Positions 905 to 18,022 of a DNA stretch of 64,000 bases are shown piece by piece. The stretch lies in the IMG/VR virus record IMGVR_UViG_3300007735_000804, positions 149,275 to 213,274 of that record, one strand, 5' to 3'. Below the pieces are notes generated by a model that was given only the letters and a program-made list of their open reading frames with translations, did no database searches and was not told the DNA's origin. Position numbers and translations under genes: made by a program. Each line of letters opens with the position of its first letter. The first letter of the stretch is position 1.

Positions 905-1537
905 TTAACTATTTATTGGTCTGTTGATCTGATAAACTTTCGGAATATATGTATCAATAGTTGCTTGTATATCAAAACTTTTACCTTTTCCAATTTTCAG
1001 ATATTTGCCAAAATTGAGACTGGTAAAACTTTCATCTTCTGAACTCTTATATGCTATTGTGTTTGGTTCCGAATCATATATTGGATTTGTAATCCAAATA
1101 TCTTTTTCGTTATCAACAAGATTAATTGTCTCCCCTGTTGATATTTTAATTTGCTCACCATTTAAAGTTATGGGCGTATTAAAACAGACCCAATCAATTC
1201 CTTCATCTACATTTGTAGTAAATAAAGTATCCATATGTACAGAATAACACCATTTTGTATTATCTTCTAATGCTGTTATTAGTATTGCTTTTTGCGGTCT
1301 TCTATTAAAACAATCACCGGCAGATACAATACCCGATGCATTACTATCAATTTCTCGACAATTAAGACTACCACTAGTTACAAAAGTACATCCATAATCT
1401 TCTATTTGATTGTCATCACCAATTGGAATTTTTGATAAGTCGCATGTAATAAATATTTCTCCTTTATTCATATTCCAATAAGATGTGCATAATTTATTTT
1501 TACTATCCCTAAATCTTTTAAATTCTACTGGTTGCAT
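905..1537 (-). CDS. Hypothetical protein (210 aa, beta-rich, possibly cupin-like), directly downstream of the adhesin
   Basis: ORF track; translationally coupled to the adhesin gene at 1537. Confidence 0.7.
   Translation of the reverse strand: MQPVEFKRFRDSKNKLCTSYWNMNKGEIFITCDLSKIPIGDDNQIEDYGCTFVTSGSLNCREIDSNASGIVSAGDCFNRRPQKAILITALEDNTKWCYSVHMDTLFTTNVDEGIDWVCFNTPITLNGEQIKISTGETINLVDNEKDIWITNPIYDSEPNTIAYKSSEDESFTSLNFGKYLKIGKGKSFDIQATIDTYIPKVYQINRPINS
910..916 (-). promoter_or_regulatory. T4-type late promoter ATAAATA
   Basis: tatttat on plus, 15 nt upstream of the ATG at 895. Confidence 0.55.
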
Positions 1538-2433
1538 TATGCTACCCCCCCTAATCTAATTCCTTCTACTAGCCAAGTTGCATAACCACTATTAACTATA
1601 TAGTTTCCTCCAGATCCTCCATTGCCCCCATTGCCCCCATTGCCGTCGGTGCCCTTATTACCGCTAGATCCAAGATCTCCACCACTACCCCCAGTTCCTG
1701 ATTCAGCTCTTCCGCTGTTAGAACCGCCACCACCGGCGCCGCCACTGACAAGAGTTCCACTATTGCCATCATTACCACCAGATCCACCGTTACCCGCATC
1801 ATATCCTGCACCACCTCCGCCACCTCCACCATCGGAAGTATCAGTATAGCAATCTTGAGTAAAACAAGATTTAGGTATACAATAGTTTTGATATCCATAT
1901 CCACCAGCGCCACCGCCACCGCCACCGCCTGCTATAGTACCATTGTTTGTAATAAAGGTGGATAATAAAAGTGTTAGAGCTGGACCACCATTACCTCCAG
2001 CATCACCATTTGTATTTCCTCCATTACCACCTTTTCCAACAATAAAGTTATTGTTTATTAGGTATAATGAAGATCCTGCAGGAAATGTTCCAGTATCAAA
2101 AGCAGTTGATGTAGTGCTAGTAGATCCTATTACTCCATTCACCGTTACATATAATTTAACGGGTAAATTATTACTTACAATTGTTGCAATTGATTTGTAC
2201 CCCCCAACAACAGATGCATTTGAAAGATCAGAATATGCATTATAGTTTTGATTTGTACCTATTGTTCTCGTAGCGTTGATAATCTTTCCATAAAAATTAG
2301 AAAATTTTATAGGACCACTATTTGGAATGCCTGCATCTAGTCCATAATAATTTGATAGAGATACTGGACTAGCAACACCAAATTCATCAGTTATTTCAGT
2401 AAAAGAAAGTTGCCCAGAAGATTTAATAGTCAT
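1537..2433 (-). CDS. Glycine-rich tail-fibre adhesin (T-even gp38-like polyglycine protein)
   Basis: N-terminus [10 protein letters not shown]...SLSNYYG...IKFSNFYG, then [22 protein letters not shown] and many GGxGGxG runs. Lies immediately downstream of a fibre gene with a C-terminal chaperone domain. Confidence 0.75.
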
Positions 2434-2438
2434 TCTTA

Positions 2439-5400
2439 TTATTTCTTGTTAATTGACTTTTTTAAATCATCAATTTCAGTTTTTAAATCTTTAATTGCCT
2501 CAATCAGAAGTGGCACGAGTTTCTCATAACGAACTGCAAGATAACCATTTTCTCTAGATGTAACTGCTTGAGGTAAGACTTCAAGAATTTCTTGTGCAAC
2601 AACACCAATATCACTACCTTCCTTACCAGATTCATTGTTCCAATCAAAGGTATTGCCACTAATTGAAATGACTTTCTCAAGCGCATCTGGAATTGGGGTA
2701 ATATTATCCTTAAGTCTTTGGTCTGAAGTATAAAATGCGGTAATATCACCAGTTACATTTAAAGCACCATTAACTTGTGTTGAAGCATTAAACAACTGCA
2801 GAATTGTATTGTAAGATCCAGCACCATTCTTAACATTAAATTGGATTTGACCACTATTTGTGGTGTTATTAATTCCAAATACACCATCACCACCACCATC
2901 ACTATGAAGATCTCCTTGTCCGGCGCCACTAGAGTTAATGTTTAAGGCATTTACGGAGGTGCTGCCAGAAACAGATAGAGTGCTTGAGAGTGTCGTAGAT
3001 CCAGTGACATTCAATGTAGAATTGAATGTGGATATTCCAGTTACATTTAGTGTTGAATTAAGTGATGTTGCTCCAGTAACGCCCAATGTAGAACTTAATG
3101 TTGTTGCTCCAGTAACGCCTAATGTAGAACTTAATGTTGTTGCTCCAGTAACGTCCAATGTAGAACTTAATGTCGTTGCTCCAGTTACATTTAAGGTCCC
3201 ACCAACATTTAGATTTTTACCAATACCAACTCCACCCGAAATAATTAAGTTTCCAGTTGTGGTTGAAGTTGATTGCGACCCTTGTGTTAGACGAACTATA
3301 TTGTTAAAAGTAGATAGTGCTTTTATTCTCAACTCTTTGTTGAAGGTGACAGGACCATCAAATTGAGAAAGAACCGCGCCAGATACACCACCTTCAACTA
3401 GAAGTCTTTCTTTAACAGTAACTTCATCAAATACAACACTGAGTTTATTTGGGTCTTGACCCGTTACTGTTGGATTTGGAATGTCATAAGAAATAACTTC
3501 TCCGCTGGATGCGGAAGTTTTGGTGTTACCAGTGTAAAAATCACCATTGTTGTTCATACCTGTATAAACAACAACCCCACAAGAACGCTCTTGAGAATTT
3601 GCCAAGAAGTTTTCTTGGTCATTTAGAGTCTTAACTTGAACTTGTGGTAAACCTGTAGAATAGTTGCCAGGACCATAACCAAGATATTCAAAGGTATGTC
3701 CAGAAGCGCGAAGAATTGATGGTCTGCGGAATTCAATCGCAATTGGGTTGATTTTGCGAATTAATGAATTAGCATCATGATCTTCTTGAACTGTACCAAG
3801 AGCTCCACGAATAACAGACGCAGAAGTAGTATTATTACTACTTATAACTCTCATAATTTCATTATCAATTTGAATATAAGAACCTAGTGGTAATCTTTGT
3901 GCTGTTCCAATTCCAACACCAGTAATATTAATTACAGTGCCAGTGGTTAATGTAGATGTAAGTGTAAATTTATCGTTTGCATAGAAAGCGACGCTACGTG
4001 CCCCAAAGTTTTCACCCCTATCATCAGAAGTTGCTTCATTAGAACTGAGACCATGCTTTAAGATATAACCGCTTGCTGTTGCAATACCTACGTTAGTAAT
4101 TGCTGTAAATGTTGTTACGCCAACCTTTTTCTCTACAATATAATCTCCAAGATTGTTGTTGTTAGAATCGATAATTCTGAATTTATTTCCAACAAGAAGA
4201 CCGTGTGCAGAAGAAGTTGTAAATGTTGTAATACCAGTCGTGGATTCGGAAATTGCAGACGATAGACCAATAGAAGGTCCAACTACAAATACATATTGAC
4301 TACTTAAAATTATTGGATCTCCAGAAGTTTTAGCAATTGAAATTGTAGTTGAAGATGGGACAGATGTAATTCTGTAATAACCATCAGATGTTGTTCCAGT
4401 ACCCGTAACTTGAATTACATCATTAATATTGGTGGAAATACCTGCTGTAGTGATAGTATATCTTGCATTTCCATTACCAGTTCCGATTTTTGTTCTATCG
4501 AAGTGTAACCCAGTTGCTGAATAACCAGAACCAGGTGCCATAAGTTCTGCAGAAACTACACCACCACCAACTACTTCAACTTTTGCCGTTGCTCCATTCC
4601 AAGTTCCAACGGATGGATTTGAACTGCTATTTAAAAGTTTTACATTATAATAAACTCCATCATTGTAAGATGCACCTGAAGTTAGAGATGAATATGTTAC
4701 AATTCCAGAAAGACCATGGAATCTTGGGAATGTAATTGTGGCAATTCCTGAAGATGATGCAATAGAACTAATTGTAAGACCAATACCTATATCTTTAAGT
4801 GTAAGGTCTGCAGTTTCTCTAGTGATACTGTTCTTTAAATCATTTGTATCAATCGCACCAATTGGAGAGCGTTTTGCAAAAGTTTTTGCAGATGGTGGAT
4901 TATCATTTATATTATCACGATCAAGTTGTGGATATAAGTCTACTGGCAGTTGCCCATATTCAAGGTTTGTGAATAGATTTGCATTAACTGTATTGCTTGC
5001 ATTTAAAACATATAAATGATATATGCCGTCTTGTTGATTGTAAATATATGGGGAAATAACTTCATTTCGGTAAATATACAAGTTTCCTTGCAAATCATTC
5101 CTCTCAAATCTTGGAAGATTTACATCTCTAGTTGTTGTAGTATCTGTAAATGTTCCTGGTGTATGCCCATTACCTTCTACATCTGTAGTTGAATATTGAA
5201 AAGTATATGCGTCGCTGATAGCAGTAATCGCAAATCTTCCATTATAACCTTCATTGAATGTGCCACTTACATTTGAAGAACTTTTCACATTTCTGATGAT
5301 TACTAGATCTCCAACTTGAAGATCATGTGGTAATTCTGAAATAACTGTAACTGTGCTAGAAATTACAGAACAAGTTGAAATAAATCTTGGGTTTTTTAAG

Positions 5401-7940
5401 TAATCATAATCAGTACTCGCAATACTTGTTCTGGTAAAATCAGTGCTAGTTCTAATGCCAGTAGAACTAGATTCTTGAATTACAAATCCAGTTTCAGGAT
5501 CTTTTGCATTTCGAAGTTCTTTTGGAATAACAACTCTAAATTTATAAAGTTTTTCATCCAAACTTCTTTCATCTGATGTGCGCTTAATATAAGCAAGATC
5601 TGTAGTTGTTCCATATGTTGCCGTTCCACCAATACTTAAAGCATTATAAATTTGATTATTTGAATTGACATGAATAAACCAGTTTTTATTTTGTGCATCA
5701 AATTGAACTGGCGATCCAAATTCTCCAGATTCTTTATCCGAAACACGACTCAAGATATGAAGATTAGTTCCTCCCGATAATTGAATAGCTTGACCCTGAA
5801 GTGCGTTTGTATAAGAAGACGCAAGTCTGATCGTATTATTATCACCAACATTAATAGCATAATAAGTTTCATGAGCATCAATATTTTCAGGAAGATCACC
5901 ATCATCACTTATAATTTTAACTTTTTCACCTGTAATAAAATTGTTAGAACCGACTGTAAATGATGTTGTAAACCCCGTGGATGGGGTTGTAGTTGCATTA
6001 TAATATTTGACTGAACTTGTAGTTCCATAAGCTGTTGTGAGTCCAGTTGCACTTATTACATTATCACACATGTAAATACTAGATTCACTTGTTCCAGTAC
6101 TTAGAGGAACATATAACTTATCATTTAATTTTGCACCAATTCGATAACCTTGTGTTTGCGATGATGGTGCTGCGTCGGGGGAGTTGAATCCATAAAGATA
6201 AAGATGACTTGAGATACCAACAGAAGTTGTTAAACCAACATCTAGTGATAACCATTCAACATTCTCTTCAGATGAAACAACAGATCTTGGAGGAATGATT
6301 GACGTAATAAAAGCATTATTATCTTTATCAAATGATTCTTTTTTAAATCCAGAAGAATTTAAAGAAATTTGTCCAAAGTTTGAGTTGGAGTTAGTGATTG
6401 AACCATCGCCACCAGACTCTGCATCAAAATGTTTATTAAAACCAATTGCGAATACAGAAACAATTTGAATGAACGCATCATTACTAATTTTAATGTGACT
6501 TGTTTCCCATCCTTGACGATAAATTGCATCTGGATCTAGATGATAAACTTGACTTGAATCTGTTTGTGATGAACCATTTGGAAGATCGGAACCAGTAACT
6601 GTGGTATAATCTATTTTTTCATAAGTTCTCGATGACTTATTATACTTTGCAAATGCACGATCATCTTTTTGAAGAGATACTGCAGTAAATTGTGCAACAA
6701 CTGTGCTTCTGAAACCAGATGCTTTACTACCATCGGCATGAAGACCATTCATACCCCATACAGAACGTAATGAGGTATTAAAGATATAAGGTGAGGCACC
6801 AGATACAGTATCAGTTTCAACGGTTACTGTTGCACTCGCAGGACTTGGACTTGGATTAATTGTTGGATAAGATCCCAGTGCTGGTAAAAGATAAGTAAAT
6901 GATGTGGAACTCTCAACACTTCTAACTATTGTTGAAATATTATAGGGTTGAGTAACACCAGAACCACCGACTCCATTAATTTTAATAGGAGTTCCTGCAT
7001 TTAATCCATGCTCATTTGATGTTGTAACTGTAACAAGAGATGTTGCAACACTACCATTACCAGAAATAATTGAAGAGATTGAAATTGGGTCTGCAGCAAA
7101 GGCACCAACAATCTCCCACTCTGGATTTCTCTTTGCAAACCCAAGAGGACTTCCTGGATATTTTTGAGTTATTTGACGATAAGCATTATAAGCATTACCA
7201 ACCTTACTATAATACATATCAAGGTCTGTGATTCCATAAGACCCAACCTTGTTTACTCCATCACAAAACTCAAAACAAGTTAGTTTGTGATGAGAGAAAT
7301 TAGGTGTAGATGTATTAATTGATCCAAAATTATCTGGATTAGTATAAACAAAACTACTTGGATCTGCATCAAATAAAGAGAATTGCCAGAAATAACAAGC
7401 ACCAGTAATTCTAAAAATCGCAGATTTTGCTACAGTATCATCAGTTGGATTTGGAACATATTTTGGACGAATCTTGGTTTTTCTTAAATCGAGACCAACA
7501 ATAGAGGTGCCTCTTGGAACAACAACACCACCATAATAACTATTAAACTTATAAAGAATATTATCTTCTTGTGTTAGATCAAAGTTAGAGTCTAATCCAA
7601 GAGAAAGAACAGAAGACGCTAAAACTCCTACACCACCTGCTCTTGAAACCGCATAAGCAGTACCACCGTTATCATAAATGGCAAAACCAGGTCTATTGTC
7701 AATTAAGTGCTCACCAGGGAACAACAGAATCGTTGTCTTCTCTGTAATATCATTATTATCTCCAGCAACATAAGAGAATCTTGCTGCTTCTAACAGTGCT
7801 CTCTGAACTGTTTTAAAAGGACGGGCAAGAGAATTACCTTCATTCTCTATACTATCTGTAGAATCAAGGTCGTTAGGATTGACATAAAGAATACGACCTT
7901 CAGTATTCTTAATAAAATTATCTAACTTATTAAGAGGCAT
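2439..7940 (-). CDS. Large virion structural/tail-fibre protein (1833 aa) with C-terminal intramolecular chaperone (peptidase S74-like) domain
   Basis: N-terminus [26 protein letters not shown] is typical of a conserved cyanomyophage structural protein. It carries 12-aa shaft repeats. The C-terminus SDQRLKDNI...GVVAQEI...[17 protein letters not shown] plus a coiled coil is the S74 chaperone signature. Confidence 0.85.
2950..3200 (-). repeat. About seven in-frame 36-bp (12-aa, [12 protein letters not shown]) repeats
   Basis: [72 protein letters not shown] in the translation. Confidence 0.85.
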
Positions 7941-9009: not shown

Positions 9010-9038
9010 ATTATAAAGGGTCTTGGGTCAGGTGTCAA
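9010..9038 (-). promoter_or_regulatory. Consensus sigma70 (early) promoter
   Basis: TTGACA-cctgacccaagaccctt (17 nt)-TATAAT on minus. Confidence 0.85.
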
Positions 9039-9585
9039 GTGGTTTTAAAAAATTCTCCAGAGGGCGATGGGCACCAAACATCCAAAGAATTCTGGGGATG
9101 TCTCCTTTTACTTCTGTAACATAATGTGGTTGCTCTGAAGCATAATAGCAGTGCAAATCTCCGACATTTATATCAATCAATTTTCCATCCACATATAAAT
9201 TCCCACCACTTTCTGGTGCTTGCGTCATTACATTGCATCTAAAAGTTGTCAGACCATCGGGTGATTTTGGATCTTGATGCTCATAAACATCACCTCCATT
9301 ATATGTAACTGAAACAACAACTCCTTGGCTTCCGTGACCTAGAATTAAAGGATTATCTTGTAAATTCATAAATTTTCTAATTTTATCAGATATTTCGATT
9401 ACATATAGTGGATATTTTTTACCTGCCATATGCATTCTACTTGTAAATCTTTTTTCATAAGCAAATTTACCTCTAGAAAGTCCAGGGGCAACCCAATGCT
9501 CTTTAATTCCTTGTAATGCAATATTAGATAATTTCTTACACTCTTCTTCAGTAAGAAAATTTCTAAAAATTTGAACCATATTCAA
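9028..9585 (-). CDS. 2OG-Fe(II) oxygenase
   Basis: HQD metal motif, GGNLY, distal H (PHYVTEV) and RILW; N-terminal FLTEEEC. Confidence 0.8.
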   Translation of the reverse strand: MNMVQIFRNFLTEEECKKLSNIALQGIKEHWVAPGLSRGKFAYEKRFTSRMHMAGKKYPLYVIEISDKIRKFMNLQDNPLILGHGSQGVVVSVTYNGGDVYEHQDPKSPDGLTTFRCNVMTQAPESGGNLYVDGKLIDINVGDLHCYYASEQPHYVTEVKGDIPRILWMFGAHRPLENFLKPLDT

Positions 9586-10322
9586 TAACCAAATCTTTCA
9601 AAATCCTTTTTATATAAATTTTTAATTAATTCAATAGTAGTATCTGTTATATTTTTTTCTATTTTTTTAGATCCATTATGATGAGGATGTTCTCCCTTGA
9701 TATTATAGTGCCCTCTTAAAAAATTAGAACATTCTTTAAGATTTTCAAGTTTAAAAATTTTTAATTTATTGTCGAGATTCACATCTAAAATATCATTCAT
9801 TCCCAAAAACATTCTAGATGGATATTTTTCGGGTAATCCATTGGTAGCAAACTCTTTTACAAACTCATTAAAGTCTTTAATCTTGTATTCTTCTTCTTTT
9901 TTAGTCAAAGAAAATAATACAGATTCGTGATTAGAATTCGTACAATAATTCCAAATACTAAACAACCTATCAACAGGATTCCTTACGATTGAAAAAACTT
10001 TTTTACTGTCATGCTCAAAAATGTTCTTACAAAATCCTTGTCTAATTTCAGAAAGACGGTTGATAAAAAAGGTTTGCTCTCCAGAAATAAAATGAAGTAG
10101 TCCCCAATCATTTGAATCATCACTAGTTTTATATGTTGGGGGACATGTTACATAAGGTTGAAACCAGCAATCATCCGACTCATAATCTCTATAAGTAAAC
10201 ACCTTATCAGAAGTGCCGATAAAATGAGACATACTGATACTAGAAGATCTAGGTATGGGACAATACATCAACAGATCTTCATTCTCATCATTTAATTTTT
10301 GTTTTAGATCTTTTAGAATCAT
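9582..10322 (-). CDS. Sulfotransferase family 2-like protein
   Basis: PIPRSSSISM resembles the 5'-PSB loop. Also FSIVRNPVDRLFSIWNY and a C-terminal LYKKDFERFGY. Confidence 0.75.
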   Translation of the reverse strand: MILKDLKQKLNDENEDLLMYCPIPRSSSISMSHFIGTSDKVFTYRDYESDDCWFQPYVTCPPTYKTSDDSNDWGLLHFISGEQTFFINRLSEIRQGFCKNIFEHDSKKVFSIVRNPVDRLFSIWNYCTNSNHESVLFSLTKKEEEYKIKDFNEFVKEFATNGLPEKYPSRMFLGMNDILDVNLDNKLKIFKLENLKECSNFLRGHYNIKGEHPHHNGSKKIEKNITDTTIELIKNLYKKDFERFGY

Positions 10323-10323
10323 A

Positions 10324-10503
10324 CTACCACTTTCCTACAGGACACTTTTGACCAGAAAGTCTAACTTTTACAGGCATAAAGCATCCACACTTTTTACATT
10401 GACGAGTTGGTTTGAAAAAATGTTCACATTGTAAACAGAATTTCATTCTATCGACCGCTTGGCGATTTTCATTATTTTCGGTATTTTCGTTATCCATATC
10501 CAT
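10324..10503 (-). CDS. Small Cys-rich protein (59 aa; CxxC...CxxCGC...KCPxGKW, DUF6171-like); not in the ORF track
   Basis: Manual translation MDMDNENTENNENRQAVDRMKFCLQCEHFFKPTRQCKKCGCFMPVKVRLSGQKCPVGKW*, directly behind a perfect promoter. Confidence 0.8.
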   Translation of the reverse strand: MDMDNENTENNENRQAVDRMKFCLQCEHFFKPTRQCKKCGCFMPVKVRLSGQKCPVGKW

Positions 10504-10523: not shown

Positions 10524-10552
10524 ATTATAAAATGTTTTGATTAATTTGTCAA
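10524..10552 (-). promoter_or_regulatory. Consensus sigma70 promoter
   Basis: TTGACA-aattaatcaaaacattt (17 nt)-TATAAT on minus, about 20 nt upstream of the Cys-rich ORF. Confidence 0.8.
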
Positions 10553-11103
10553 TTTGAATTATTTGATTCTGCTTCTAACTCTGCCTCTGCCTGTGCAAGA
10601 AGTTCTTCATCAGATAATGTTGTTAAAGATATCCCACCAGAAGTTAAAGGATTGTTTTCTCGTGCTTCAGTAATCAAATCCTCTACAGAAGTATTTGTTT
10701 TTTCTAAATAATCTTCTATAAAAGAATCAAGAACGTCAAGTAATCTAGTATCACCATTTCTTGCAAGATACTTTGAAATAGAATCTAAACTGAAAGGACG
10801 ATGTGATGTTCTTCCTGGAGTAAGAGGTTTTATCGCTATTCCATCTGGAGGAATTACAGGTTCTATTTTAATTGGCGTTGGATCATCAGTTTCTTTTCTT
10901 ACAGAGGATCTTTCTTGACCAATATAAACATCAGGATTGCAAACATCTTCTTGTTTTTTTATAAAATCTGGATCATATTTAGATACTTCATGATCAATAT
11001 CTTCTAAGCTAGCGCCAGGGGCAATTGGTACAATTGCCCAAGATCCATCTTCATATTCAACTTTAACTTGCCCTGGGGCAACATCTAAAATTTTGTATTG
11101 CAT
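10549..11103 (-). CDS. Hypothetical protein (184 aa) downstream of the second adhesin
   Basis: ORF track. Confidence 0.7.
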   Translation of the reverse strand: MQYKILDVAPGQVKVEYEDGSWAIVPIAPGASLEDIDHEVSKYDPDFIKKQEDVCNPDVYIGQERSSVRKETDDPTPIKIEPVIPPDGIAIKPLTPGRTSHRPFSLDSISKYLARNGDTRLLDVLDSFIEDYLEKTNTSVEDLITEARENNPLTSGGISLTTLSDEELLAQAEAELEAESNNSN

Positions 11104-11128: not shown

Positions 11129-11998
11129 TTATCCAACTCTTCCAAGACGAGTTCCTGTTGCGGACCAAGTAACATTGTTATCATTGACAATATAATAACC
11201 TGCTAAACCACCAGCGGCGCCAGCAGATCCAGCAGTATAATTACCATTTGCTCCAGTTCCACCATTTCCCCCAGATACTCCAAAAGTTCCACCATTGCCA
11301 CCAGTTCCCCCATTACCAGCATTTGTTCCGCCAGCAGCACCACCAGAACCATTAGTATTATTTCTTGCATATCCTTGACCTAATCCACCAGTACCCCCAG
11401 CACCTCCAGCATAATAGTTAGTCCCTGTACAAGTATCACAGCAAGTATAGCAGTTGCAGCATTGTCCTCCTTTACCACAACAATAGCAACCTCCGTCACC
11501 ACAACAAGTCTGACAACAACCACAATTGCAACACTCATGGCAATTACAATCATAGGTGTAGTTTTGATATCCTTGACCCCCAGTACCACCTTGTCCACCA
11601 CCACCTCCGCCACCATAAATGGTTCCTGCGTTATTAATCGTCACTGCAGATCCTGCATAAATTGCATTTCCTCCAGTTCCGCCATTGGCAGCACCACCAG
11701 CACCCTGAATAGAACCATTATTAACAAGAATGAGACTCCCAGACATGCTTGAATTTATGTACAAAGCATAATCTGATACATTAGGAGACCCAACAACTAC
11801 ACCTGAATTAATAGTAAGTCTTTTTGGAACATTAGATGTCCAATATGATCCAAATAAAACAGCAACGTTTACATTAATTGTATTGGTGGCAATAGTAGCG
11901 GAAGCTTCATAATCTCCATATATTGAAGATCTTGCCGAATATATACTTCCCATGTAATAAATTTTTACAGTATTAGGTGAATAAAAATTACTAGGCAT
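11129..11998 (-). CDS. Second glycine-rich gp38-like adhesin with a Cys-rich insertion
   Basis: INSGVVVGS, NNGSIQGAGG, NAGTIYGGGGGGG and a C-terminal AGYYIVN...W...GTRLG.V paralleling the 1537-2433 protein. Contains 18 Cys in residues encoded at 11429-11548. Confidence 0.8.
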   Translation of the reverse strand: MPSNFYSPNTVKIYYMGSIYSARSSIYGDYEASATIATNTINVNVAVLFGSYWTSNVPKRLTINSGVVVGSPNVSDYALYINSSMSGSLILVNNGSIQGAGGAANGGTGGNAIYAGSAVTINNAGTIYGGGGGGGQGGTGGQGYQNYTYDCNCHECCNCGCCQTCCGDGGCYCCGKGGQCCNCYTCCDTCTGTNYYAGGAGGTGGLGQGYARNNTNGSGGAAGGTNAGNGGTGGNGGTFGVSGGNGGTGANGNYTAGSAGAAGGLAGYYIVNDNNVTWSATGTRLGRVG

Positions 11999-12007
11999 AT
12001 AAGTTAT

Positions 12008-12451
12008 TTATTGTAACCCCAATAAGATCTTTAATTCTTCAACGGTTAATCCTGCACTTTCTAGTTTTTGTTCTGGTGTCAATTGTACTTCTGGTGCATC
12101 TTCTATTAACCAACTTTCACTAGCATTATCCCATTTAATTCTTTTTCTTAATTTTGGTTCTGGAGGATCTGGCGGTTGCTTTCTGGTTGCATTTGTCGGC
12201 AAAAAATTCGGATCATCAACCCATAGCTTCATTCTTGTATCAAGATCATACCAAGTTCCCCTATTGTCTTTAATAATCTTCCAGGATTGCCCATCAAATA
12301 TTGGAATATAACCTGGAGAATAATTTGGTGCTTGAATCATCGTTGCATGTGCTGGTATTAACCATACATCTGGTTCATCTAATGGTGAAGGATCAGCAAA
12401 ACCTTCAGAAGTAAAATACTTATACTCTGGGTGATAATTATAAATTTTCAT
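12008..12451 (-). CDS. Tail fibre assembly chaperone (Tfa-like)
   Basis: IYNYHPE...ADPSPLDEPDVWLIPAHAT...P...FDGQSWKIIKDNRG is the typical Tfa pattern, and the gene lies near the 3' end of a collar-domain fibre. Confidence 0.75.
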   Translation of the reverse strand: MKIYNYHPEYKYFTSEGFADPSPLDEPDVWLIPAHATMIQAPNYSPGYIPIFDGQSWKIIKDNRGTWYDLDTRMKLWVDDPNFLPTNATRKQPPDPPEPKLRKRIKWDNASESWLIEDAPEVQLTPEQKLESAGLTVEELKILLGLQ

Positions 12452-12460
12452 AATTTTAAA

Positions 12461-12931
12461 TTAAAAATAGTTTAAATTTATTACAACTCTAGCAGGAGCA
12501 TCCGTACAACTAGTACCACAGTGCTCTAAATTACTATCAAAAATAACAACTCTATTTGCAACACTATTTACCTTTTTTCCATTTTTAAATTTTGTATACC
12601 CATCGCAAGTATTAAGATAAAAGACCGCAGTTTTCATATTTGGAAAATCAATATGATAATCGTGTTCTTCTATTGTTTCTGTTCTTGGATTTAAATTTGC
12701 TTTAACTCTAACTAAAGATTGTACGTTGAGTTTTTCTCTCAAGCACAAAATATTTGAATACAAATGTGTTGGTTGATCGTATTGATAAAAGCAATGTGTA
12801 TTTTGATGGAATTTACTTCCAGTTGTAACAGATCCAAAAAACCAGGGAAAACTAGTCCCCATAACTAAACGACGAATCATATCAAATTGATTATGATTTA
12901 AAAAATCATCAATAATCTCAAAATTTGTCAT
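12461..12931 (-). CDS. 2OG-Fe(II) oxygenase (cyanophage type)
   Basis: HID motif, TAVFYLNTCDGYTKF, SVANRVVIFD, H.G, R.VINLNY. Confidence 0.8.
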   Translation of the reverse strand: MTNFEIIDDFLNHNQFDMIRRLVMGTSFPWFFGSVTTGSKFHQNTHCFYQYDQPTHLYSNILCLREKLNVQSLVRVKANLNPRTETIEEHDYHIDFPNMKTAVFYLNTCDGYTKFKNGKKVNSVANRVVIFDSNLEHCGTSCTDAPARVVINLNYF

Positions 12932-12958: not shown

Positions 12959-15900
12959 TCAATATTTTATGCAAGGAAGAAGTGCTAGGTTACGTGGACG
13001 AGTTTCAGATCCACCAGCGGGATCAGTTGTCCAATCAGTATAGAATGGGTTATTATCATTGTCATTTCCTGTTCTTGAACCTGGATAGTAATTTGGCAAT
13101 CCAGAGTTACCATTATTTTCAGCGTAATAAAAGTTTCTAAAATTGTGAGCATGTGATTGAATATCTTGAGATTGGAATGATCCAAAGGTTCTTCCACCAT
13201 CTACACCTCTTCCACCATCCCAACCCCGAATGAATTCTCCACGCAAATCAGGAAGATTAAATGTTGTGCTACCATCACCTGCACCATAAGTAGTTCCAAG
13301 AATGGTAAACAATACAGAATACGTTGTTCTTGAAATTGCTGCACCATTACATGATAGATACCCAGTTGGAGCACTTGATGCTGCAAAATAAAATACAGAT
13401 CCAGTAGGAACAACACTGCTGCCTACTGAAGTGTCGTACCAAATGTCACCATCACAAAGACCAACTGGTTCTGTAGGTTGAACAAATCTTCTACCATATG
13501 CATTACTAGTTGACCCAATGCCAATAATATTACCACCAGTTACTGAAATTGGATTTGGACAAGCATATCCAATTTGATTTACGGTAACGTTACCACCACC
13601 GCCACCACTAATTGAAACATTCACTAATCCTGCAGATGGGCTTATTGCTGTAACTGCAGATCCAATGAAATTAATCGTTGTAATTCCAAGTTGAGTTCCT
13701 ACAGTTGCACCTTCTTCTTGAATTGTAATTCCTGCAATGCCACCAGCACTAGATACTGATTTCCATGTCCAACCGCCAGAACCATTTGCAGTTAAAACAA
13801 AATTATTAGTTCCAGTCCCACCGCCAGAATCTTGAATGCTAGATGGTTTTATACTTGGAACAGTAAGCAAATCAGTAGAAGGGGTGTATGTAATTGCAGA
13901 ATCTACAAATGCTGTGGTGATTCCACTAGTAACACTAGACAAAACTAGATATCTAGATGAACCACTAGTATCAGTCGTTACATTAAGACTTGATGCTACT
14001 CCAATTGTAATAGTATTTGGATCAGACCAAACAGGTGCATTACTTGTATCATTCCAAGTAAGAATTCTACCATTAGCATTTGGATCTGCTAAAAATGTGG
14101 TTGTATTTGACGCTGTTTGATATGGTATAGAACCTGCAGCACCACCTTTAAGATTTGTAGCAATGCCAGAGTTATCAGCATAATTTGCTTTATCGACAAT
14201 TAATCCAGTTGGATTGACCCAAGAAGGTGCTGAACCAGAATTATATTGAAGAAGTTGACCTGTAAGTGTTCCGTTTGATATGAATGCAGTTGTATTCGCT
14301 GCCGTCTGATAAGGTATTTGATAAGCAGCACCACCTTTAAGATTTGTAGCAATGCCAGCATTTGTAGCAATACCGGCATTATCCGCATAAGATGCTTTAT
14401 CTACACTTAATCCAGTTGGATTTACCCAAGAGGGTGCTGAAGTTCCATTGGATTGTAGTAGTTGTCCTGAAGTTCCATTAGGAATGAATGCAGTTGTATT
14501 TGCTGCCGTTTGATAAGGAATTTGAGACGCAATACCACCTTTAAGATTGGTAGCGATACCAGAGTTGTCAGCATAATTAGCCTTATCTACAGTAAGACCA
14601 GTTGGATTGACCCAAGAAGGTGCTGAACCAGAGTTATATTGGAGAAGTTGACCTGTAGTAGATCCATTAGGAATAAATGCAGTTATATTCGCTGCCGTCT
14701 GATAAGGTATTTGATAAGCAGCACCACCTTTAAGATTTGTGGAAATACCAGCATTGTTAGCATAGTTTGCTACGCTAAAATCAATACTTACATTAGATGC
14801 TGCTGTTACTCTACCTTTAGCATCTACTGTCAAAATACCCACTTGAGTTGCAGATCCATAAGTACCTGCTACAACACCACTATTACTTAAAATAGTAGTA
14901 ATGGTGACGTTCTGACTTCCATCAAACGTAGTACCAATACCAACACCAATTACATCACCATCAATATCAATATTTCTTGGTGTTGCCAGTCTGGTTGCAG
15001 TATCAGCATTTCCCGAAATAGCGCCCACGAAAGTGTTAGCGTAAACGTTATTCCATTTATTAGAAGTTGCACCTAAATTTAAAGTGCCATTTGTTGATGG
15101 AAGTACATTTCCACCAAATGTTGACACACCAGCGATATTTAATTGTTTGGAGAATAAATTAGGTCCAGTAACTGTTGCAATACCCGCAAATGTTGATAAA
15201 CCAGAAACAATGAGTTGAGATGTTGAAGTTCCGCTACCAGCTACTGTAAGGGTAGTTGTAGGGTTCGAAACATTGATCCCAAGAGAATTTGTGCTTGGAT
15301 TATAAACAATTTCACTATCAACTAATGCCGATGTAATACCACTGGTTCCACTTGATAAAAGTAAATATCTATCAATATTGGCATTATCAGTTGTTACTGT
15401 AAGACTTGATGCTGCACCAGTTAACGTTCCAATTATATTGGTAGCATAAAAATTATTCCAGCGAAATGATGGAGATCCTAAATTATAAGTGTTATCTACT
15501 GATGGAAGAATATTTCCTCCAAATGTTGATACACCAACGATTCTTATATTACCTTGAACATATAAAGATGATGTTGGATTTGCAGTTCCTATACCAATAT
15601 TACCAGAACTATTAATAACTAAATGATTTGCATTATCACTATTAGTAGCATTAAAGAAAATAGCATTATCCGCAGAAAGTAATCCAAATCTTGCTTTTTC
15701 TGTCCCTTGTCTAAAATATCTTACATAAGTTTGATCTTGTGCTGCTAAACCTCTATCAATTCTAAAGATACCTTGTAAATGCAAACTGTCTTGTGGATTT
15801 GTGGTCCCTATGCCAAGATTATTTGTGTTGGGGTTATAAACAATCCCATCATCAGAAAGTGCTGTCGTAATACCACTTGTTTTACTAGACAAGACAAAAT

Positions 15901-18022
15901 ATCTAGATGTATTTGCATCATCTGTAGTTACTGTAAGACTCGATGCCGCTCCAGTAATATTGCCAATTATATTATTGACATAAAAATTATCCCAACGAAG
16001 TGATGGAGATCCTAAATTATAAGTATTATCTGCTGATGGAGATACATTGGAACTAATTCGAGCATTAAATGTAACTGTATCACTATTAGCGTCTCCTAAA
16101 GTTACATTGCCTCCAACATTTAAATTCTTCTCAATACCAACACCACCTTCAACAACTAATGCCCCAGTATCTTTATTTGTAGACTCTGTAGTGTTTGATA
16201 TTGAAGTAATACCAGAAACAACTAGTTGATCATTAATTGATGTAGTGCCGCCAGAAGAATCAATTGTTAAATTACCTGTTGTTGTATCAATTGTATTATC
16301 ATTTGTAATTCCAATTTGAATATTATCAATATATGCTCCGGCGAGAGTACTAACCCCAACTACTCTCAAATTTCTAGTAGTGGTTATACCAGAAACACCT
16401 AAAGTTGCAACTGTAGCAACTCCACTTACGGTGAAGTCTCTTGTAGATACGATTCCTGTAAAGAAACCATTTCTAGCAAAAAGTTCGTCATAAAAAACAT
16501 CATCTTTTATGAATAAATCCCCACCAACATATAAATCACCACCAGTTGTCGTAATACCACCTAAAGTTGCTAAATTAACTGCTCCACCAACATTGAGACG
16601 TTTTTCAATACCAACACCACCTTCAACAATAAGAGCACCAGTATCTTTGTCCGTAGATTCAGTTGTATCATTGATATAAACGGCATCATTAATTTGGGTT
16701 GTTCCTAGAGCAGAATCTAAAATTAAATTTCCTGTTAAAGTACTAATAGTATTAGTATCTAATTTGATATTATCAAAAGTTCCAACACCAGTAACGTTTA
16801 AATTATTAACATTAACTATAGATGAAAATGTTGAAACACCACTAACATTTAATTGATTAAGAGTAAGAGTTTGATAAACTTGAAGATTTTGAGTTGTTGT
16901 AAGACCAGTGACTCCTAGATCGCTATTAATATTGACCTTTTGTAAAAAGGTTGATACTCCAGTTACATATAAATTCGTAACATCTATAGCGCCAATAAAT
17001 TTTGATGCTGTTACAATACCAGCAAAATATGCATTTGTACCAGTTATAAAACCTAATGTTGCAATACCAGATACAACAAGATTACGAGTTGTAGTTGTCC
17101 CTGTTACGCCAAGAGTTGAAACCGCAAGATTATCAACTGTGACACCGCCTCTAAAACTAGATATTCCTAAAACATCTAGTAAAACTCTTGGTTGCGTAGT
17201 TCCAATACCAATTCGATTATTGTTATCATCAAACACAAAATTGGGAGCACCACCAATTAAACCAGCACTGTTATGAAATTGTATGTTTTGATATGTACCA
17301 CCAGCACCTGCATTAATTGTTCCAGGATTTGTCCAATTCAATCCACCAAAATTATTTTTAACTAAAATTTGAGAATTAGTTCCTGGTTGATTATTGGAAT
17401 CATAAATTGTTCCAGTTAATCTTAAATCTCCTTGAATATGAAGTTCTTGTGTTGGATTTGTGGTTGCTATACCAACCAAACCATCAAGAGTTGTAGTAAT
17501 TACAGTGCCGCCAGCACCAACAAAAATCCTATCACCAGCAGATAAGAGTCCTGTAGGTGAATCAAAAGTAAGTTTTGATGAGGTTGAAAATTCATTTGAT
17601 GCATTGAATAAAAGTTCTTTATTATTTCCAGGAGCAAATACAGTAATTGTGACTGCTACACCTGGAGAACTATCAGGATTTAAATAACCTTTGGCAGAAA
17701 CCGCTGCACCAACAAAATTTAATTGAGTAATACTACTCAATCCACCAGTCGGAGTTAAAACTCCATCGTCAAATACACTAATTGAACCAGGAATGATGCC
17801 ACCCTGATTTATAATCCAATATCTATCAGTCGCACCAGATCCAACAGAGGCAAGAATATATTGAGTTCCTGGGGGTATAGGCTTTGCTCCAATAGAAGAT
17901 GGACCTACTAATGGATTGCCAAGATTTGGTTCTACTTCATCAGTATACAAATACTTGTATCTATCGTTGCGTAATTGTTCTTGCGGGGTTAGTCTAGTAC
18001 GACCCGATAAGTAACGTGGCAT
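12959..18022 (-). CDS. Long tail fibre protein (1687 aa) with C-terminal phage tail-collar domain
   Basis: C-terminal VPTGSVFYFAASSAPTGYLSCNGAAISRTTYSVLFTILGTTYGAGDGSTTFNLPDLRGEFIRGWD...ETRPRNLALLPCIKY is the collar signature. Multiple internal repeats are present. Confidence 0.88.
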   Translation of the reverse strand: MPRYLSGRTRLTPQEQLRNDRYKYLYTDEVEPNLGNPLVGPSSIGAKPIPPGTQYILASVGSGATDRYWIINQGGIIPGSISVFDDGVLTPTGGLSSITQLNFVGAAVSAKGYLNPDSSPGVAVTITVFAPGNNKELLFNASNEFSTSSKLTFDSPTGLLSAGDRIFVGAGGTVITTTLDGLVGIATTNPTQELHIQGDLRLTGTIYDSNNQPGTNSQILVKNNFGGLNWTNPGTINAGAGGTYQNIQFHNSAGLIGGAPNFVFDDNNNRIGIGTTQPRVLLDVLGISSFRGGVTVDNLAVSTLGVTGTTTTRNLVVSGIATLGFITGTNAYFAGIVTASKFIGAIDVTNLYVTGVSTFLQKVNINSDLGVTGLTTTQNLQVYQTLTLNQLNVSGVSTFSSIVNVNNLNVTGVGTFDNIKLDTNTISTLTGNLILDSALGTTQINDAVYINDTTESTDKDTGALIVEGGVGIEKRLNVGGAVNLATLGGITTTGGDLYVGGDLFIKDDVFYDELFARNGFFTGIVSTRDFTVSGVATVATLGVSGITTTRNLRVVGVSTLAGAYIDNIQIGITNDNTIDTTTGNLTIDSSGGTTSINDQLVVSGITSISNTTESTNKDTGALVVEGGVGIEKNLNVGGNVTLGDANSDTVTFNARISSNVSPSADNTYNLGSPSLRWDNFYVNNIIGNITGAASSLTVTTDDANTSRYFVLSSKTSGITTALSDDGIVYNPNTNNLGIGTTNPQDSLHLQGIFRIDRGLAAQDQTYVRYFRQGTEKARFGLLSADNAIFFNATNSDNANHLVINSSGNIGIGTANPTSSLYVQGNIRIVGVSTFGGNILPSVDNTYNLGSPSFRWNNFYATNIIGTLTGAASSLTVTTDNANIDRYLLLSSGTSGITSALVDSEIVYNPSTNSLGINVSNPTTTLTVAGSGTSTSQLIVSGLSTFAGIATVTGPNLFSKQLNIAGVSTFGGNVLPSTNGTLNLGATSNKWNNVYANTFVGAISGNADTATRLATPRNIDIDGDVIGVGIGTTFDGSQNVTITTILSNSGVVAGTYGSATQVGILTVDAKGRVTAASNVSIDFSVANYANNAGISTNLKGGAAYQIPYQTAANITAFIPNGSTTGQLLQYNSGSAPSWVNPTGLTVDKANYADNSGIATNLKGGIASQIPYQTAANTTAFIPNGTSGQLLQSNGTSAPSWVNPTGLSVDKASYADNAGIATNAGIATNLKGGAAYQIPYQTAANTTAFISNGTLTGQLLQYNSGSAPSWVNPTGLIVDKANYADNSGIATNLKGGAAGSIPYQTASNTTTFLADPNANGRILTWNDTSNAPVWSDPNTITIGVASSLNVTTDTSGSSRYLVLSSVTSGITTAFVDSAITYTPSTDLLTVPSIKPSSIQDSGGGTGTNNFVLTANGSGGWTWKSVSSAGGIAGITIQEEGATVGTQLGITTINFIGSAVTAISPSAGLVNVSISGGGGGNVTVNQIGYACPNPISVTGGNIIGIGSTSNAYGRRFVQPTEPVGLCDGDIWYDTSVGSSVVPTGSVFYFAASSAPTGYLSCNGAAISRTTYSVLFTILGTTYGAGDGSTTFNLPDLRGEFIRGWDGGRGVDGGRTFGSFQSQDIQSHAHNFRNFYYAENNGNSGLPNYYPGSRTGNDNDNNPFYTDWTTDPAGGSETRPRNLALLPCIKY
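14100..14770 (-). repeat. Three to four tandem ~59-aa modules (ANYADNxGIATNLKGGAAYQIPYQTAANTTAFI...GQLLQ...PSWVNPTGL)
   Basis: Seen in the translation, with near-identical DNA blocks such as gataaggtatttgataagcagcaccacctttaagatttgt. Confidence 0.8.

What the first reader, a model, noticed from the sequence alone, without database searches (positions are those of the whole stretch)
11429..11548. gp38-like adhesin with an 18-cysteine, 40-residue knob on a Tyr-rich stalk
The sequence YQNYTYD-CNCHECCNCGCCQTCCGDGGCYCCGKGGQCCNCYTCCDTC-TGTNYY is inserted between two polyglycine segments (seen). T-even gp38 adhesins display hypervariable loops on a polyglycine sandwich (established), but a 45%-Cys loop is metallothionein- or knottin-like. 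Its stalk-and-knob layout recalls ultralong antibody CDR3s. It may be a disulfide ladder that forms on lysis or a multi-metal cluster serving as the receptor-binding tip (inference).
Basis: partly seen in the sequence, partly recalled or inferred. Interest (0 to 1): 0.7.

Follow-up and report, generated by a model that had tools for sequence, protein, structure and literature searches.

The report
Cysteine-packed finger on cyanophage adhesin
A freshwater cyanobacterial virus carries a gp38-type tail-fibre adhesin whose main variable loop has grown into a 53-residue hairpin with 18 invariant cysteines in 40 residues, the extreme case of a widespread, apparently undescribed habit of these phages of building their receptor probe from cysteine-rich, probably disulfide-bonded modules.

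Summary
Window 11429..11548 (minus strand) encodes residues 151-190 of a 289-aa protein (11129..11998). That stretch holds 18 Cys in 40 residues, between Tyr-rich arms and two polyglycine motifs. Background Cys in the window is 0.75%.

The protein has the gp38 adhesin fold. Its AlphaFold model (pLDDT 87.9) aligns to S16 and PP01 gp38 at Z 19.2, against Z 6 for the next chain. The genome is a 213-kb myovirus with psbA, and the gene is found in river and lake metagenomes.

The knob sits where T-even gp38 has its second hypervariable segment (PP01 loop-B). Seven natural variants keep all 18 Cys, while 12 of the 22 other positions vary, mostly at two Gly-rich turns.

The family is large, with 385 clusters at E<=1e-30. 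Most members have a Cys-rich insert at this site. Inserts with at least 4 Cys have even counts 31:2 among representatives at 50% identity. That favours intramolecular disulfides over metal sites as the family rule.

My best reading is a disulfide-braced beta-hairpin receptor probe. A metallothionein-like metal cluster is not excluded for this extreme case. Attachment to a fibre and the receptor itself remain inferred. I rate it a new variant of a known kind.

The parts
11129..11998 (-). gp38-type adhesin gene (289 aa, P0001). It has a variable N-terminal part, a beta-helix, and a polyglycine-II sandwich with one enlarged hypervariable insert.
   Evidence: ORF. phrog_10745 at 2.9e-40. AF2 model with pLDDT 87.9. 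Foldseek's top three hits are gp38 structures. VIA Z 19.2, rmsd 2.7 A over 184 residues to 6f45_D and 9v85_A.
11429..11548 (-). Cys-dense core, residues 151-190: 18 Cys in 40 residues. It has two Gly-rich turns, GDGG (167-170) and GKGGQ (175-179). Nine Cys lie before the first turn and nine after it.
   Evidence: All 18 Cys are invariant in 7 natural variants, while 12 of 22 non-Cys columns vary. Synonymous TGT/TGC switching. pLDDT is about 80 at the base and 57-58 at the tip.
11549..11569 (-). Ascending Tyr-rich stalk arm, residues 144-150 (YQNYTYD).
   Evidence: Modelled as part of strand 143-157.
11411..11428 (-). Descending Tyr-rich stalk arm, residues 191-196 (TGTNYY).
   Evidence: Modelled as part of strand 183-196.
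11570..11614 (-). Glycine-rich motif before the insert, residues 129-143. Together with residues 101-128 it aligns to residues 127-163 of a T-even gp38.
   Evidence: hhalign of family profile A1 against Escherichia phage fFiEco06 gp38. Invariant Gly columns. Contigs of other phages match this stretch and then diverge.
11372..11410 (-). Glycine-rich motif after the insert, residues 197-209.
   Evidence: Invariant Gly columns G198-G209.
12008..12451 (-). Tail-fibre-assembly (lambda Tfa-like) chaperone, 147 aa, directly upstream of the adhesin gene.
   Evidence: phrog_105 at 6.5e-17 and phrog_35518. tblastn hits to Tfa genes. This chaperone type co-occurs with fibres that end in a Collar domain.
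12959..18022 (-). 1687-aa tail fibre with a C-terminal tail-collar head. It opens the conserved cassette of fibre, chaperone and adhesin.
   Evidence: Pfam Collar at 9.3e-23. Tail-fibre PHROGs. Conserved synteny in L004, L007, L008 and L009.
12461..12931 (-). 2OG-Fe(II) oxygenase-like gene inserted between the fibre and the chaperone.
   Evidence: PF13640 at 2.5e-4, below the cut-off. phrog_274 at 1.1e-47. Also present in L004.
10549..11103 (-). Conserved 184-aa protein of unknown family that follows the adhesin gene in every cassette examined.
   Evidence: No Pfam or PHROG hit. Orthologues lie downstream of the adhesin in L004, L007, L008 and L009.
1537..2433 (-). Second gp38-like paralogue (298 aa, P0122) with a short 4-Cys insert. 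It lies directly downstream of a 1833-aa fibre.
   Evidence: PF05268 GP38 at E 1.5e-4 over profile positions 5-212 of 218. The fibre has a Peptidase_S74 C-terminus.

Best explanation
P0001 is a monomeric gp38-type receptor-binding adhesin of a freshwater T4-like cyanomyovirus. Its beta-helix and polyglycine-II sandwich form a conserved platform. At the position of the second hypervariable segment of T-even gp38 (PP01 loop-B), the usual short loop is replaced by a 53-residue beta-hairpin finger. The finger has two Tyr-rich ribbon strands as a stalk and a 40-residue core in which 18 Cys cross-brace the two arms.

In the mature, extracellular virion these Cys are most likely paired in intramolecular disulfides, up to nine of them. 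That would make a very rigid probe resistant to proteases and oxidants. Its few non-Cys side chains, above all those at the two Gly-rich turns and at position 172, would carry receptor specificity.

The finger is one cassette among many. Related phages carry other Cys-rich or Cys-free modules at the same site, probably exchanged by recombination at the glycine-rich motifs.

Shown: the fold, the insert position, Cys invariance and family parity. Inferred: disulfide state, presence at a fibre tip, and receptor contact.
For: - **Fold.** The AF2 model has pLDDT 87.9. Foldseek's only hits at E<1 are the gp38 structures 9v85 and 6f45_D. VIA gives Z 19.2 and rmsd 2.7 A over 184 residues, against Z 6 for the next chain.
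- **Insert position.** Family residues 101-135 align to T-even gp38 127-163, so the insert starts where HVS2/loop-B starts. HVS loops are the receptor-binding apex in S16, PP01 and other Straboviridae (PMC12032242, PMC12892980).
- **Constraint.** 0 of 18 Cys columns vary in 7 natural variants, against 12 of 22 other columns. Random placement would give this with probability about 1e-4. Ten Cys codons changed synonymously. Indels and substitutions concentrate at turns 167-170 and 175-179.
- **Disulfides as the family rule.** In 93 close homologues, Cys counts in the insert are even and non-zero in 74, odd in 3 and zero in 16, and Cys is nearly absent outside the insert. In 72 representatives at 50% identity, inserts with at least 4 Cys are even 31:2. 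Counts of 4k and 4k+2 are equally common, 15 against 19, which does not fit Cys4 metal sites.
- **The nearest lower-Cys relative.** P0004 has 4 Cys on the ascending side and 4 on the descending side, and shares the base motifs. The window's knob has 9 and 9. Both splits fit arm-to-arm pairing.
- **Precedent.** Disulfides in a mature cyanophage tail were shown by cryo-EM and mass spectrometry in Pam3 (PMC9942802).
- **Context.** A conserved cassette of fibre, chaperone and adhesin occurs in five loci. The genome carries psbA.
- **Cassette exchange.** Contigs from other phages in the same samples match only the glycine-rich flanks and then diverge.
Against: - No known disulfide-rich domain reaches 45% Cys (own knowledge). 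Nine disulfides in 40 residues with six CC doublets would be sterically demanding.
- The tip, residues 161-180, is modelled at pLDDT 57-58, and I could not inspect S-S distances.
- The cytoplasm where the virion is assembled is reducing. The genome shows no Erv1/ALR, DsbA or thioredoxin homologue, so oxidation would have to happen after lysis or by unknown means.
- The CxC/CC/CxxC pattern fits metal-thiolate clusters equally well.
- The family parity argument is drawn from inserts with far lower Cys density and may not carry over to this one.
- Attachment to a fibre is unproven. Adhesin N-termini do not co-vary with the fibre's C-terminal domain type.
- No virion proteome or host is available for this phage.
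Confidence: 0.5

Rival explanations
1. The knob is a metallothionein-like metal-thiolate cluster displayed on the virion. It would hold about 6 divalent ions, or more Cu(I). The cluster would be either the fold-determining core of the receptor probe or the ligand itself, for instance one presented to a host metal-uptake receptor.
For: At 45%, the Cys density exceeds that of metallothioneins. The pattern is made only of CxC, CC and CxxC spacings, and the 9+9 Cys split around a Gly turn recalls M3S9 clusters (own knowledge). The protein is made in a reducing cytoplasm, and the genome has no known thiol oxidase. The tip is modelled with low confidence without ligands.
Against: - No Pfam metallothionein or other family matches the knob at E<=10.
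- Aromatic residues are present (Y172, or W or H there, and Y184), which is atypical for metallothioneins (own knowledge).
- His154 is replaced by Gln in natural variants, so it is not an essential ligand.
- The family's even Cys parity, with 4k+2 counts as common as 4k, argues for disulfides in the sister modules.
- Exposed thiolate clusters would be prone to oxidation on particles that persist in oxic, sunlit water (inference).
Confidence: 0.2
2. The Cys serve intermolecular chemistry. They might cross-link the adhesin covalently to another virion protein or to neighbouring adhesins. Alternatively they might undergo thiol-disulfide exchange with a host surface protein, acting as a covalent or redox-triggered attachment step.
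For: In cyanophage Pam3, Cys-rich regions anchor tail fibres to the baseplate by intermolecular disulfides (PMC9942802). Very Cys-dense proteins such as keratin-associated proteins and minicollagen Cys-rich domains act as cross-linkers (own knowledge).
Against: Even parity across the family points to self-contained pairing. By homology the insert lies at the distal, receptor-facing apex rather than the attachment end. gp38 adhesins are monomeric (PMC12032242).
Confidence: 0.08
3. The finger is not the receptor-binding element. It would be a structural strut, a stabiliser or a shield, and specificity would lie in the other short loops or in the collar head of the fibre.
For: The upstream fibre ends in a tail-collar head of the kind that itself binds receptors in T4 gp12 (own knowledge). 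The descending arm, residues 180-190, is fully invariant in all seven variants, and conservation is high for a supposed specificity element.
Against: This site is by far the most variable part of the family in length (12-133 aa) and sequence, as expected for a specificity determinant. It corresponds to a loop needed for infectivity in PP01 (PMC12892980). Within the knob lineage, changes cluster at the exposed turns.
Confidence: 0.12

Closest known systems
Gp38 adhesins of T-even-like Straboviridae (S16 gp38, PDB 6F45; PP01 gp38, PDB 9V85; Pfam PF05268)
   Same: The three-part fold is the same: an N-terminal part, a beta-helix closed by the C-terminus, and a polyglycine-II sandwich (Z 19.2). 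Glycine-rich motifs alternate with variable segments, and there is a shared motif before the poly-Gly run. The gene lies downstream of a long fibre gene. The variable segments sit at the distal apex.
   Different: Sequence similarity is marginal. hmmscan finds no Pfam hit for P0001, and the paralogue scores 22.1 bits against a cut-off of 25. PDB sequence searches find only Gly linkers. T-even gp38 has four or five short loops of 4-10 residues, whereas here one site carries a 53-residue module and the others are short. The T-even gp38 I read has no Cys in its variable segments. A chaperone gene lies between the fibre and the adhesin. The host is a cyanobacterium.
Cyanophage glycine-rich fibre domains and gp38-like ORFs (Pam3 gp24; S-SRM01 ORF53)
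   Same: A polyglycine-II lattice is used as the distal receptor-binding domain in cyanomyophages (PMC9942802). A PF05268-like ORF was noted by HHpred in the freshwater cyanomyovirus S-SRM01 (PMC8557907).
   Different: Pam3 gp24 is a trimeric fibre with a TNF-like domain and 12 glycine-rich motifs, and its disulfides are at the baseplate end. Neither paper describes Cys-rich inserts in the glycine lattice.
Disulfide-laddered beta-hairpins and stacked hairpins (hepcidin, theta-defensins, granulins, Wnt fingers)
   Same: These are long two-stranded ribbons braced by several cross-strand disulfides, with frequent CxC and CC spacings (own knowledge). Wnt chains appear among the weak structural neighbours of the model.
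   Different: Those peptides reach 20-33% Cys, against 45% here. There is no sequence or profile similarity. The analogy is mechanistic and implies no membership.
Ultralong bovine antibody CDR H3 (stalk and knob)
   Same: A beta-ribbon stalk rich in alternating aromatic residues carries a small Cys-rich, hypervariable binding module with an even number of Cys, mounted on a conserved scaffold (own knowledge).
   Different: The scaffold and origin are unrelated. Bovine knobs usually have 4-8 Cys in about 40 residues and form a globular mini-domain. Here the model continues the hairpin through most of the Cys block.
Metallothioneins
   Same: Very high Cys content with CxC, CC and CxxC spacings, and a small size.
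   Different: No profile match. The knob contains aromatic residues. It is an insert in an extracellular virion protein rather than a free cytosolic protein. Metal binding was not tested.

Membership tests
GP38 tail-fibre adhesin (PF05268; S16/T2 type) | Significant match to the family's sequence profile | tested here: inconclusive
   hmmscan gives no hit for P0001 or five homologues even at E<=10. The paralogue P0122 scores 22.1 bits (E 1.5e-4) over profile positions 5-212 of 218, below the 25-bit cut-off. The protein database's precomputed table lists PF05268 for nearly all homologues. hhalign to a T-even gp38 aligns only 35 columns (E 0.0013, probability 18%).
GP38 tail-fibre adhesin (PF05268; S16/T2 type) | Fold: beta-helix domain plus three-layer polyglycine-II sandwich | tested here: met
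   The AF2 model has pLDDT 87.9. Foldseek probability is 1.00 to 9v85 and 6f45_D, with no other hit at E<1. VIA gives Z 19.2 and rmsd 2.7 A over 184-186 residues spanning model residues 24-289.
GP38 tail-fibre adhesin (PF05268; S16/T2 type) | Conserved glycine-rich motifs interrupted by hypervariable segments | tested here: met
   The invariant columns of the 63-sequence alignment are all Gly, in blocks at 99-110, 130-143, 198-209 and 217-267. The insert between 143 and 197 varies from 12 to 133 residues.
GP38 tail-fibre adhesin (PF05268; S16/T2 type) | Monomer that caps the trimeric distal fibre tip through its N-terminal domain | tested here: inconclusive
   The complex job with three copies of the fibre C-terminus gave no verdict. 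Residues 1-30 of the N-terminus are modelled poorly. Adhesin N-termini do not co-vary with fibre end type.
GP38 tail-fibre adhesin (PF05268; S16/T2 type) | Gene placed just after the distal long-fibre gene | tested here: met
   The order fibre, small chaperone, adhesin is conserved in the window and in L004, L007, L008 and L009. Unlike in T-even phages, a chaperone gene (and here also an oxygenase gene) lies between the two.
GP38 tail-fibre adhesin (PF05268; S16/T2 type) | Present in virions and binds the host receptor through the variable loops | not testable with these tools
   No isolate, proteome or host is available. The runs labelled RNA-Seq are probably DNA.
Metallothionein | Match to a metallothionein sequence family | tested here: not met
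   Pfam scan of residues 140-200 and 148-193 found no family at E<=10.
Metallothionein | Cys about 30% in CxC/CC/CxxC motifs, with aromatic residues essentially absent | tested here: inconclusive
   The Cys motifs are present at 45%. Tyr, Trp or His occurs at position 172 and Tyr at 184.
Metallothionein | Binds several metal ions through thiolates | not testable with these tools
   This needs ICP-MS or native mass spectrometry.
Knottin / inhibitor cystine knot | Six Cys in a knotted 1-4, 2-5, 3-6 disulfide topology on a small triple-stranded sheet | tested here: inconclusive
   No profile match. The only weak PDB sequence hits to the knob were scorpion toxins and RING fingers at E 0.9-10. Disulfide connectivity cannot be read from the tool output. 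With 18 Cys, the module is not a canonical knottin.

The most novel reading that the evidence does not exclude
The 18-Cys finger is not a plain disulfide-stapled loop. It would be a metal-thiolate or redox-switchable cluster displayed at the tip of a virion adhesin. It would be metal-loaded when assembled in the reducing cytoplasm. It would then either present the metal to a host uptake receptor or be reshaped by oxidation and reduction at the cell surface to trigger infection. That would be a kind of receptor probe unknown in phages.
Probability: 0.15. Interest if true: 0.85.

Novelty: new variant of a known kind. Interest (0 to 1): 0.58.

Why it matters
Gp38-type adhesins are a main model for how T4-like phages choose hosts, and they serve as a scaffold for host-range engineering. 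So far they are known only with short, Cys-free loops.

This analysis shows a large aquatic branch, with hundreds of 50%-identity clusters, in which one loop site carries exchangeable mini-domains. Most of these are Cys-rich with even Cys counts. One lineage pushes the density to 45% Cys, above the metallothioneins and disulfide-rich peptides I can recall.

If the Cys are disulfides, two things follow. The module would be among the most densely cross-linked natural protein modules, of interest as a stable binding scaffold. It would also raise a concrete question: how does a phage fold such a module in a reducing cyanobacterial cytoplasm without a known oxidase?

If the Cys bind metals, the knob would link virion adsorption to trace-metal chemistry. 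Either answer can be reached with a recombinant protein.

Tried and rejected
- **tblastn against the phage collection.** P0001 and its N-terminal 135 residues found nothing, and megablast of the locus found nothing. The homologue P0076 hit only the N-terminal part of Rhizobium phage proteins. I therefore could not name a cultured relative.
- **The search for related loci with the family alignment.** It chose poly-Gly patterns and returned only two weak loci. I used the look-up of encoding contigs instead.
- **PDB sequence searches.** Searches with the protein and with the profile gave only Gly-Ser linker artefacts and chance Cys matches.
- **Pfam scan of the knob alone.** No family matched.
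- **ESM Atlas look-alikes for residues 144-196.** Scores stayed under 0.8 and the structural neighbours were generic hairpins.
- **Complex prediction.** P0001 with three copies of the last 230 residues of the 1687-aa fibre scored 0.17 against a mark of 0.34. There was no verdict, so it counts neither for nor against binding.
- **Transcription evidence.** The two runs labelled RNA-Seq are probably DNA and cover only fragments, so there is no evidence of transcription.
- **BLAST clustering of the inserts into classes.** Without composition correction, almost all Cys-rich inserts fell into one cluster, so I give no class count.
- **Phage-encoded thiol oxidoreductases.** Erv1/ALR, DsbA and thioredoxin searches of the genome were all negative.
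- **Artefact or non-coding explanations.** I considered and rejected a tandem-repeat artefact and a non-coding or shadow-frame explanation.

Full report
**1. What is in the sequence**

The minus strand of window 11129..11998 holds a 289-aa ORF, P0001. Residues 151-190 map exactly to the reported coordinates 11429..11548 and contain 18 Cys in 40 residues. The spacing uses only CxC, CC and CxxC patterns, apart from the longer gaps at two Gly-rich turns, GDGG at 167-170 and GKGGQ at 175-179. Nine Cys lie before the first turn and nine after it.

The block is flanked by YQNYTYD (144-150) and TGTNYY (191-196). Beyond these lie glycine-rich motifs at 129-143 and 197-209. The rest of the protein has no Cys.

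Cys makes up 0.75% of the long ORFs in the window, and the next richest 40-residue window has 4 Cys. The binomial probability of 18 in 40 is about 5e-28. The DNA is not a tandem repeat.

**2. The frame is real and constrained**

Only two other clusters among 5.8 billion share this knob: P0002, and P0003 with its full-length member P0127. Against the orthologous locus L004, the knob has 16 codons with synonymous-only changes and 4 with non-synonymous changes. Ten of the 18 Cys codons switch between TGT and TGC and none is replaced.

The gene is held by metagenome runs from rivers, lakes, fresh water and sediments, and by viral metagenomes, spanning several studies from 2018 to 2025. Contigs from three such runs give further variants:
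- D168K
- H154Q
- a one-codon deletion at the first turn (GDGG to GKT)
- GKGGQ to GKQGT at the second turn

Across the seven variants, 12 of the 22 non-Cys columns vary and none of the 18 Cys columns does. Random placement of the variable columns would give this with probability about 1e-4. The descending arm, residues 180-190, is invariant. Change concentrates at the two turns and at positions 154-163 and 172.

**3. What the protein is**

PHROGs place it in phrog_10745, of unknown function, at 2.9e-40. Pfam hmmscan finds nothing for it. A paralogue in the same window, P0122 at 1537..2433, matches PF05268 GP38 over nearly the whole profile just below the cut-off. The protein database's precomputed table lists PF05268 for almost all homologues.

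An AlphaFold2 model built on 63 homologues has mean pLDDT 87.9. In the PDB its only Foldseek matches at E<1 are PP01 gp38 and S16 gp38. VIA-align gives Z 19.2 and rmsd 2.7 A over 184-186 residues spanning residues 24-289, while the next chain scores Z 6. The fold is therefore that of the gp38 adhesins: a beta-helix closed by the C-terminus, plus a polyglycine-II sandwich.

The literature establishes that in these adhesins the glycine-rich motifs form the sandwich and the hypervariable segments form the distal receptor-binding loops (PMC12032242 and PMC12892980).

A profile alignment places family residues 101-135 on residues 127-163 of a T-even gp38. The insert therefore starts where HVS2, or PP01 loop-B, starts. 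The probability of that alignment is low (18%), but it agrees with the structural superposition.

**4. The genome and the cassette**

The window is the last 64 kb of a 213,274-bp virus record rated complete. The genome carries psbA, and the window carries a T4-type baseplate hub and several long fibres. It is therefore a T4-like cyanomyovirus, and the runs that hold the gene point to fresh water.

The gene order on the minus strand is:
- a 1009-aa protein
- a 223-aa protein
- the 1687-aa fibre with a tail-collar head
- a 2OG-Fe(II) oxygenase-like gene
- a lambda Tfa-like chaperone
- the adhesin
- a 184-aa unknown protein

The core of this order recurs in L004, L007, L008 and L009. The small chaperone type follows the type of the fibre's C-terminal domain: Tfa-like with collar heads, and a 104-aa type otherwise. 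The adhesin's N-terminus does not follow it. Where the adhesin docks is therefore not settled.

**5. The family and the parity argument**

HMMER against 1.84 billion representatives finds 5,703 proteins at E<=0.001 and 385 at E<=1e-30. The site between the second and third glycine-rich motifs carries inserts of 12-133 residues.

| Set | Sequences parsed | Even, non-zero | Odd | Zero Cys |
|---|---|---|---|---|
| Close homologues | 93 | 74 | 3 | 16 |
| 50%-identity representatives | 72 | 34 | 9 | 29 |

Outside the insert, Cys is almost absent. Six of the nine odd representatives have a single Cys. Among representative inserts with at least 4 Cys, the split is 31 even to 2 odd. Counts of 4k and 4k+2 are about equally common, 15 against 19.

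Even parity is what intramolecular disulfide pairing demands, and it is not what metal sites demand. The sequences are related, so the binomial values overstate independence, but the inserts themselves are very diverse.

The 18-Cys knob is the extreme of this continuum. The next richest 40-residue windows in the 269 proteins fetched hold 13 and 11 Cys. Its nearest relative, P0004, keeps the base motifs and has 4 Cys on the ascending side and 4 on the descending side.

**6. Shape of the insert**

The model makes strands 143-157 and 183-196 into a long hairpin. pLDDT is 98 in the Tyr-rich arms, about 80-85 at the base of the Cys block, and 57-58 at residues 161-180.

If the Cys are paired in nested order across the two arms, the position sums are 340-342 for the six outer pairs. 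The three inner pairs reach 341-343 once the GKGGQ bulge is skipped. This is compatible with one continuous hairpin, but it is my arithmetic, not a prediction of connectivity. I could not read the coordinates.

**7. Mechanism**

My best reading is a gp38-type adhesin whose loop-B site has become a rigid, Cys-braced finger that contacts the host receptor with the residues at its turns. The disulfides would form after release into oxic water or by an unknown route. The genome has no Erv1/ALR, DsbA or thioredoxin homologue. Disulfides in a mature cyanophage tail have been shown for Pam3 (PMC9942802).

The main rival is a metallothionein-like cluster. The density and pattern fit, and the protein is made in a reducing cytoplasm. 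Against it, no profile matches, aromatic residues are present, His154 is dispensable, and the sister modules show disulfide-type parity. Intermolecular cross-linking and a purely structural role are less likely.

**8. Novelty**

Gp38-like ORFs in cyanomyoviruses have been noted before (PMC8557907), and a glycine lattice is known in Pam3. Four full-text searches found no description of Cys-rich inserts in such adhesins. I rate the finding a new variant of a known kind. The platform is known. The modular, Cys-rich probe is not, nor is this 45%-Cys extreme.

**9. Limits**

There is no isolate, host, proteome or transcript evidence, and no coordinates for the model. The complex prediction gave no verdict. 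The parity argument is transferred from less Cys-dense relatives.

Noticed in passing
window 1537..2433 (-) and 2439..7940 (-): There is a second gp38-like paralogue (P0122, 298 aa). It has the common N-terminal motif that P0001 lacks and a short 4-Cys insert. It lies directly downstream of a 1833-aa fibre whose C-terminus is a Peptidase_S74 intramolecular chaperone (PF13884, 3.3e-14). The phage therefore has two fibre-plus-adhesin modules.
   Followed up: partly
window 9028..10322 (-), 12461..12931 (-), 12959..18022 (-): The adhesin sits in a neighbourhood of a tail-collar fibre, 2OG-Fe(II) oxygenase-like genes and a sulfotransferase (PF03567, 3e-10). Iyer et al. 2010 (PMC2938197) proposed that such neighbourhoods hydroxylate and then sulfate tail-collar or glycine-rich proteins. 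The fibre or the Tyr-rich stalk could be a substrate. This is untested.
   Followed up: partly
window 10324..10503 (-): A 59-aa ORF with a CxxC...CxxCxC pattern has a weak DUF6171 match (E 3e-4). It is conserved as a 58-aa gene in L004, between the 184-aa protein and the sulfotransferase.
   Followed up: no
window 10549..11103 (-); L004 2612-3163; L007 10064-10564; L008 9926-10426; L009 10062-10544: [quoted passage not shown] It has no Pfam or PHROG family and may be a further assembly factor or fibre part.
   Followed up: partly
window 12008..12451 (-) versus L007 8666-8980 and L009 8674-8988: The small gene between fibre and adhesin comes in two unrelated types that track the fibre's C-terminal domain. 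A Tfa-like protein of 145-147 aa goes with collar heads, and a 104-aa protein goes with another head type. The adhesin N-terminus does not track it.
   Followed up: partly
window 11280..11351 and 11577..11634: In four metagenome runs, many contigs match only these glycine-rich stretches and then run on as unlike sequence. The glycine-rich motifs thus act as shared borders of different insert cassettes, as proposed for T-even gp38.
   Followed up: partly
whole gene, window 11129..11998: The runs that hold this exact gene are river, lake, freshwater, sediment and viral metagenomes. Despite psbA and a T4-like cyanophage layout, the phage appears to be a freshwater one rather than a marine one.
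   Followed up: partly
P0129 (610 aa), P0130-P0133 (522-717 aa): Some family representatives are about twice the usual length and match the profile in two or three stretches. This suggests tandem or fused gp38-like domains. P0129 has 13 Cys in its richest 40-residue window.
   Followed up: no
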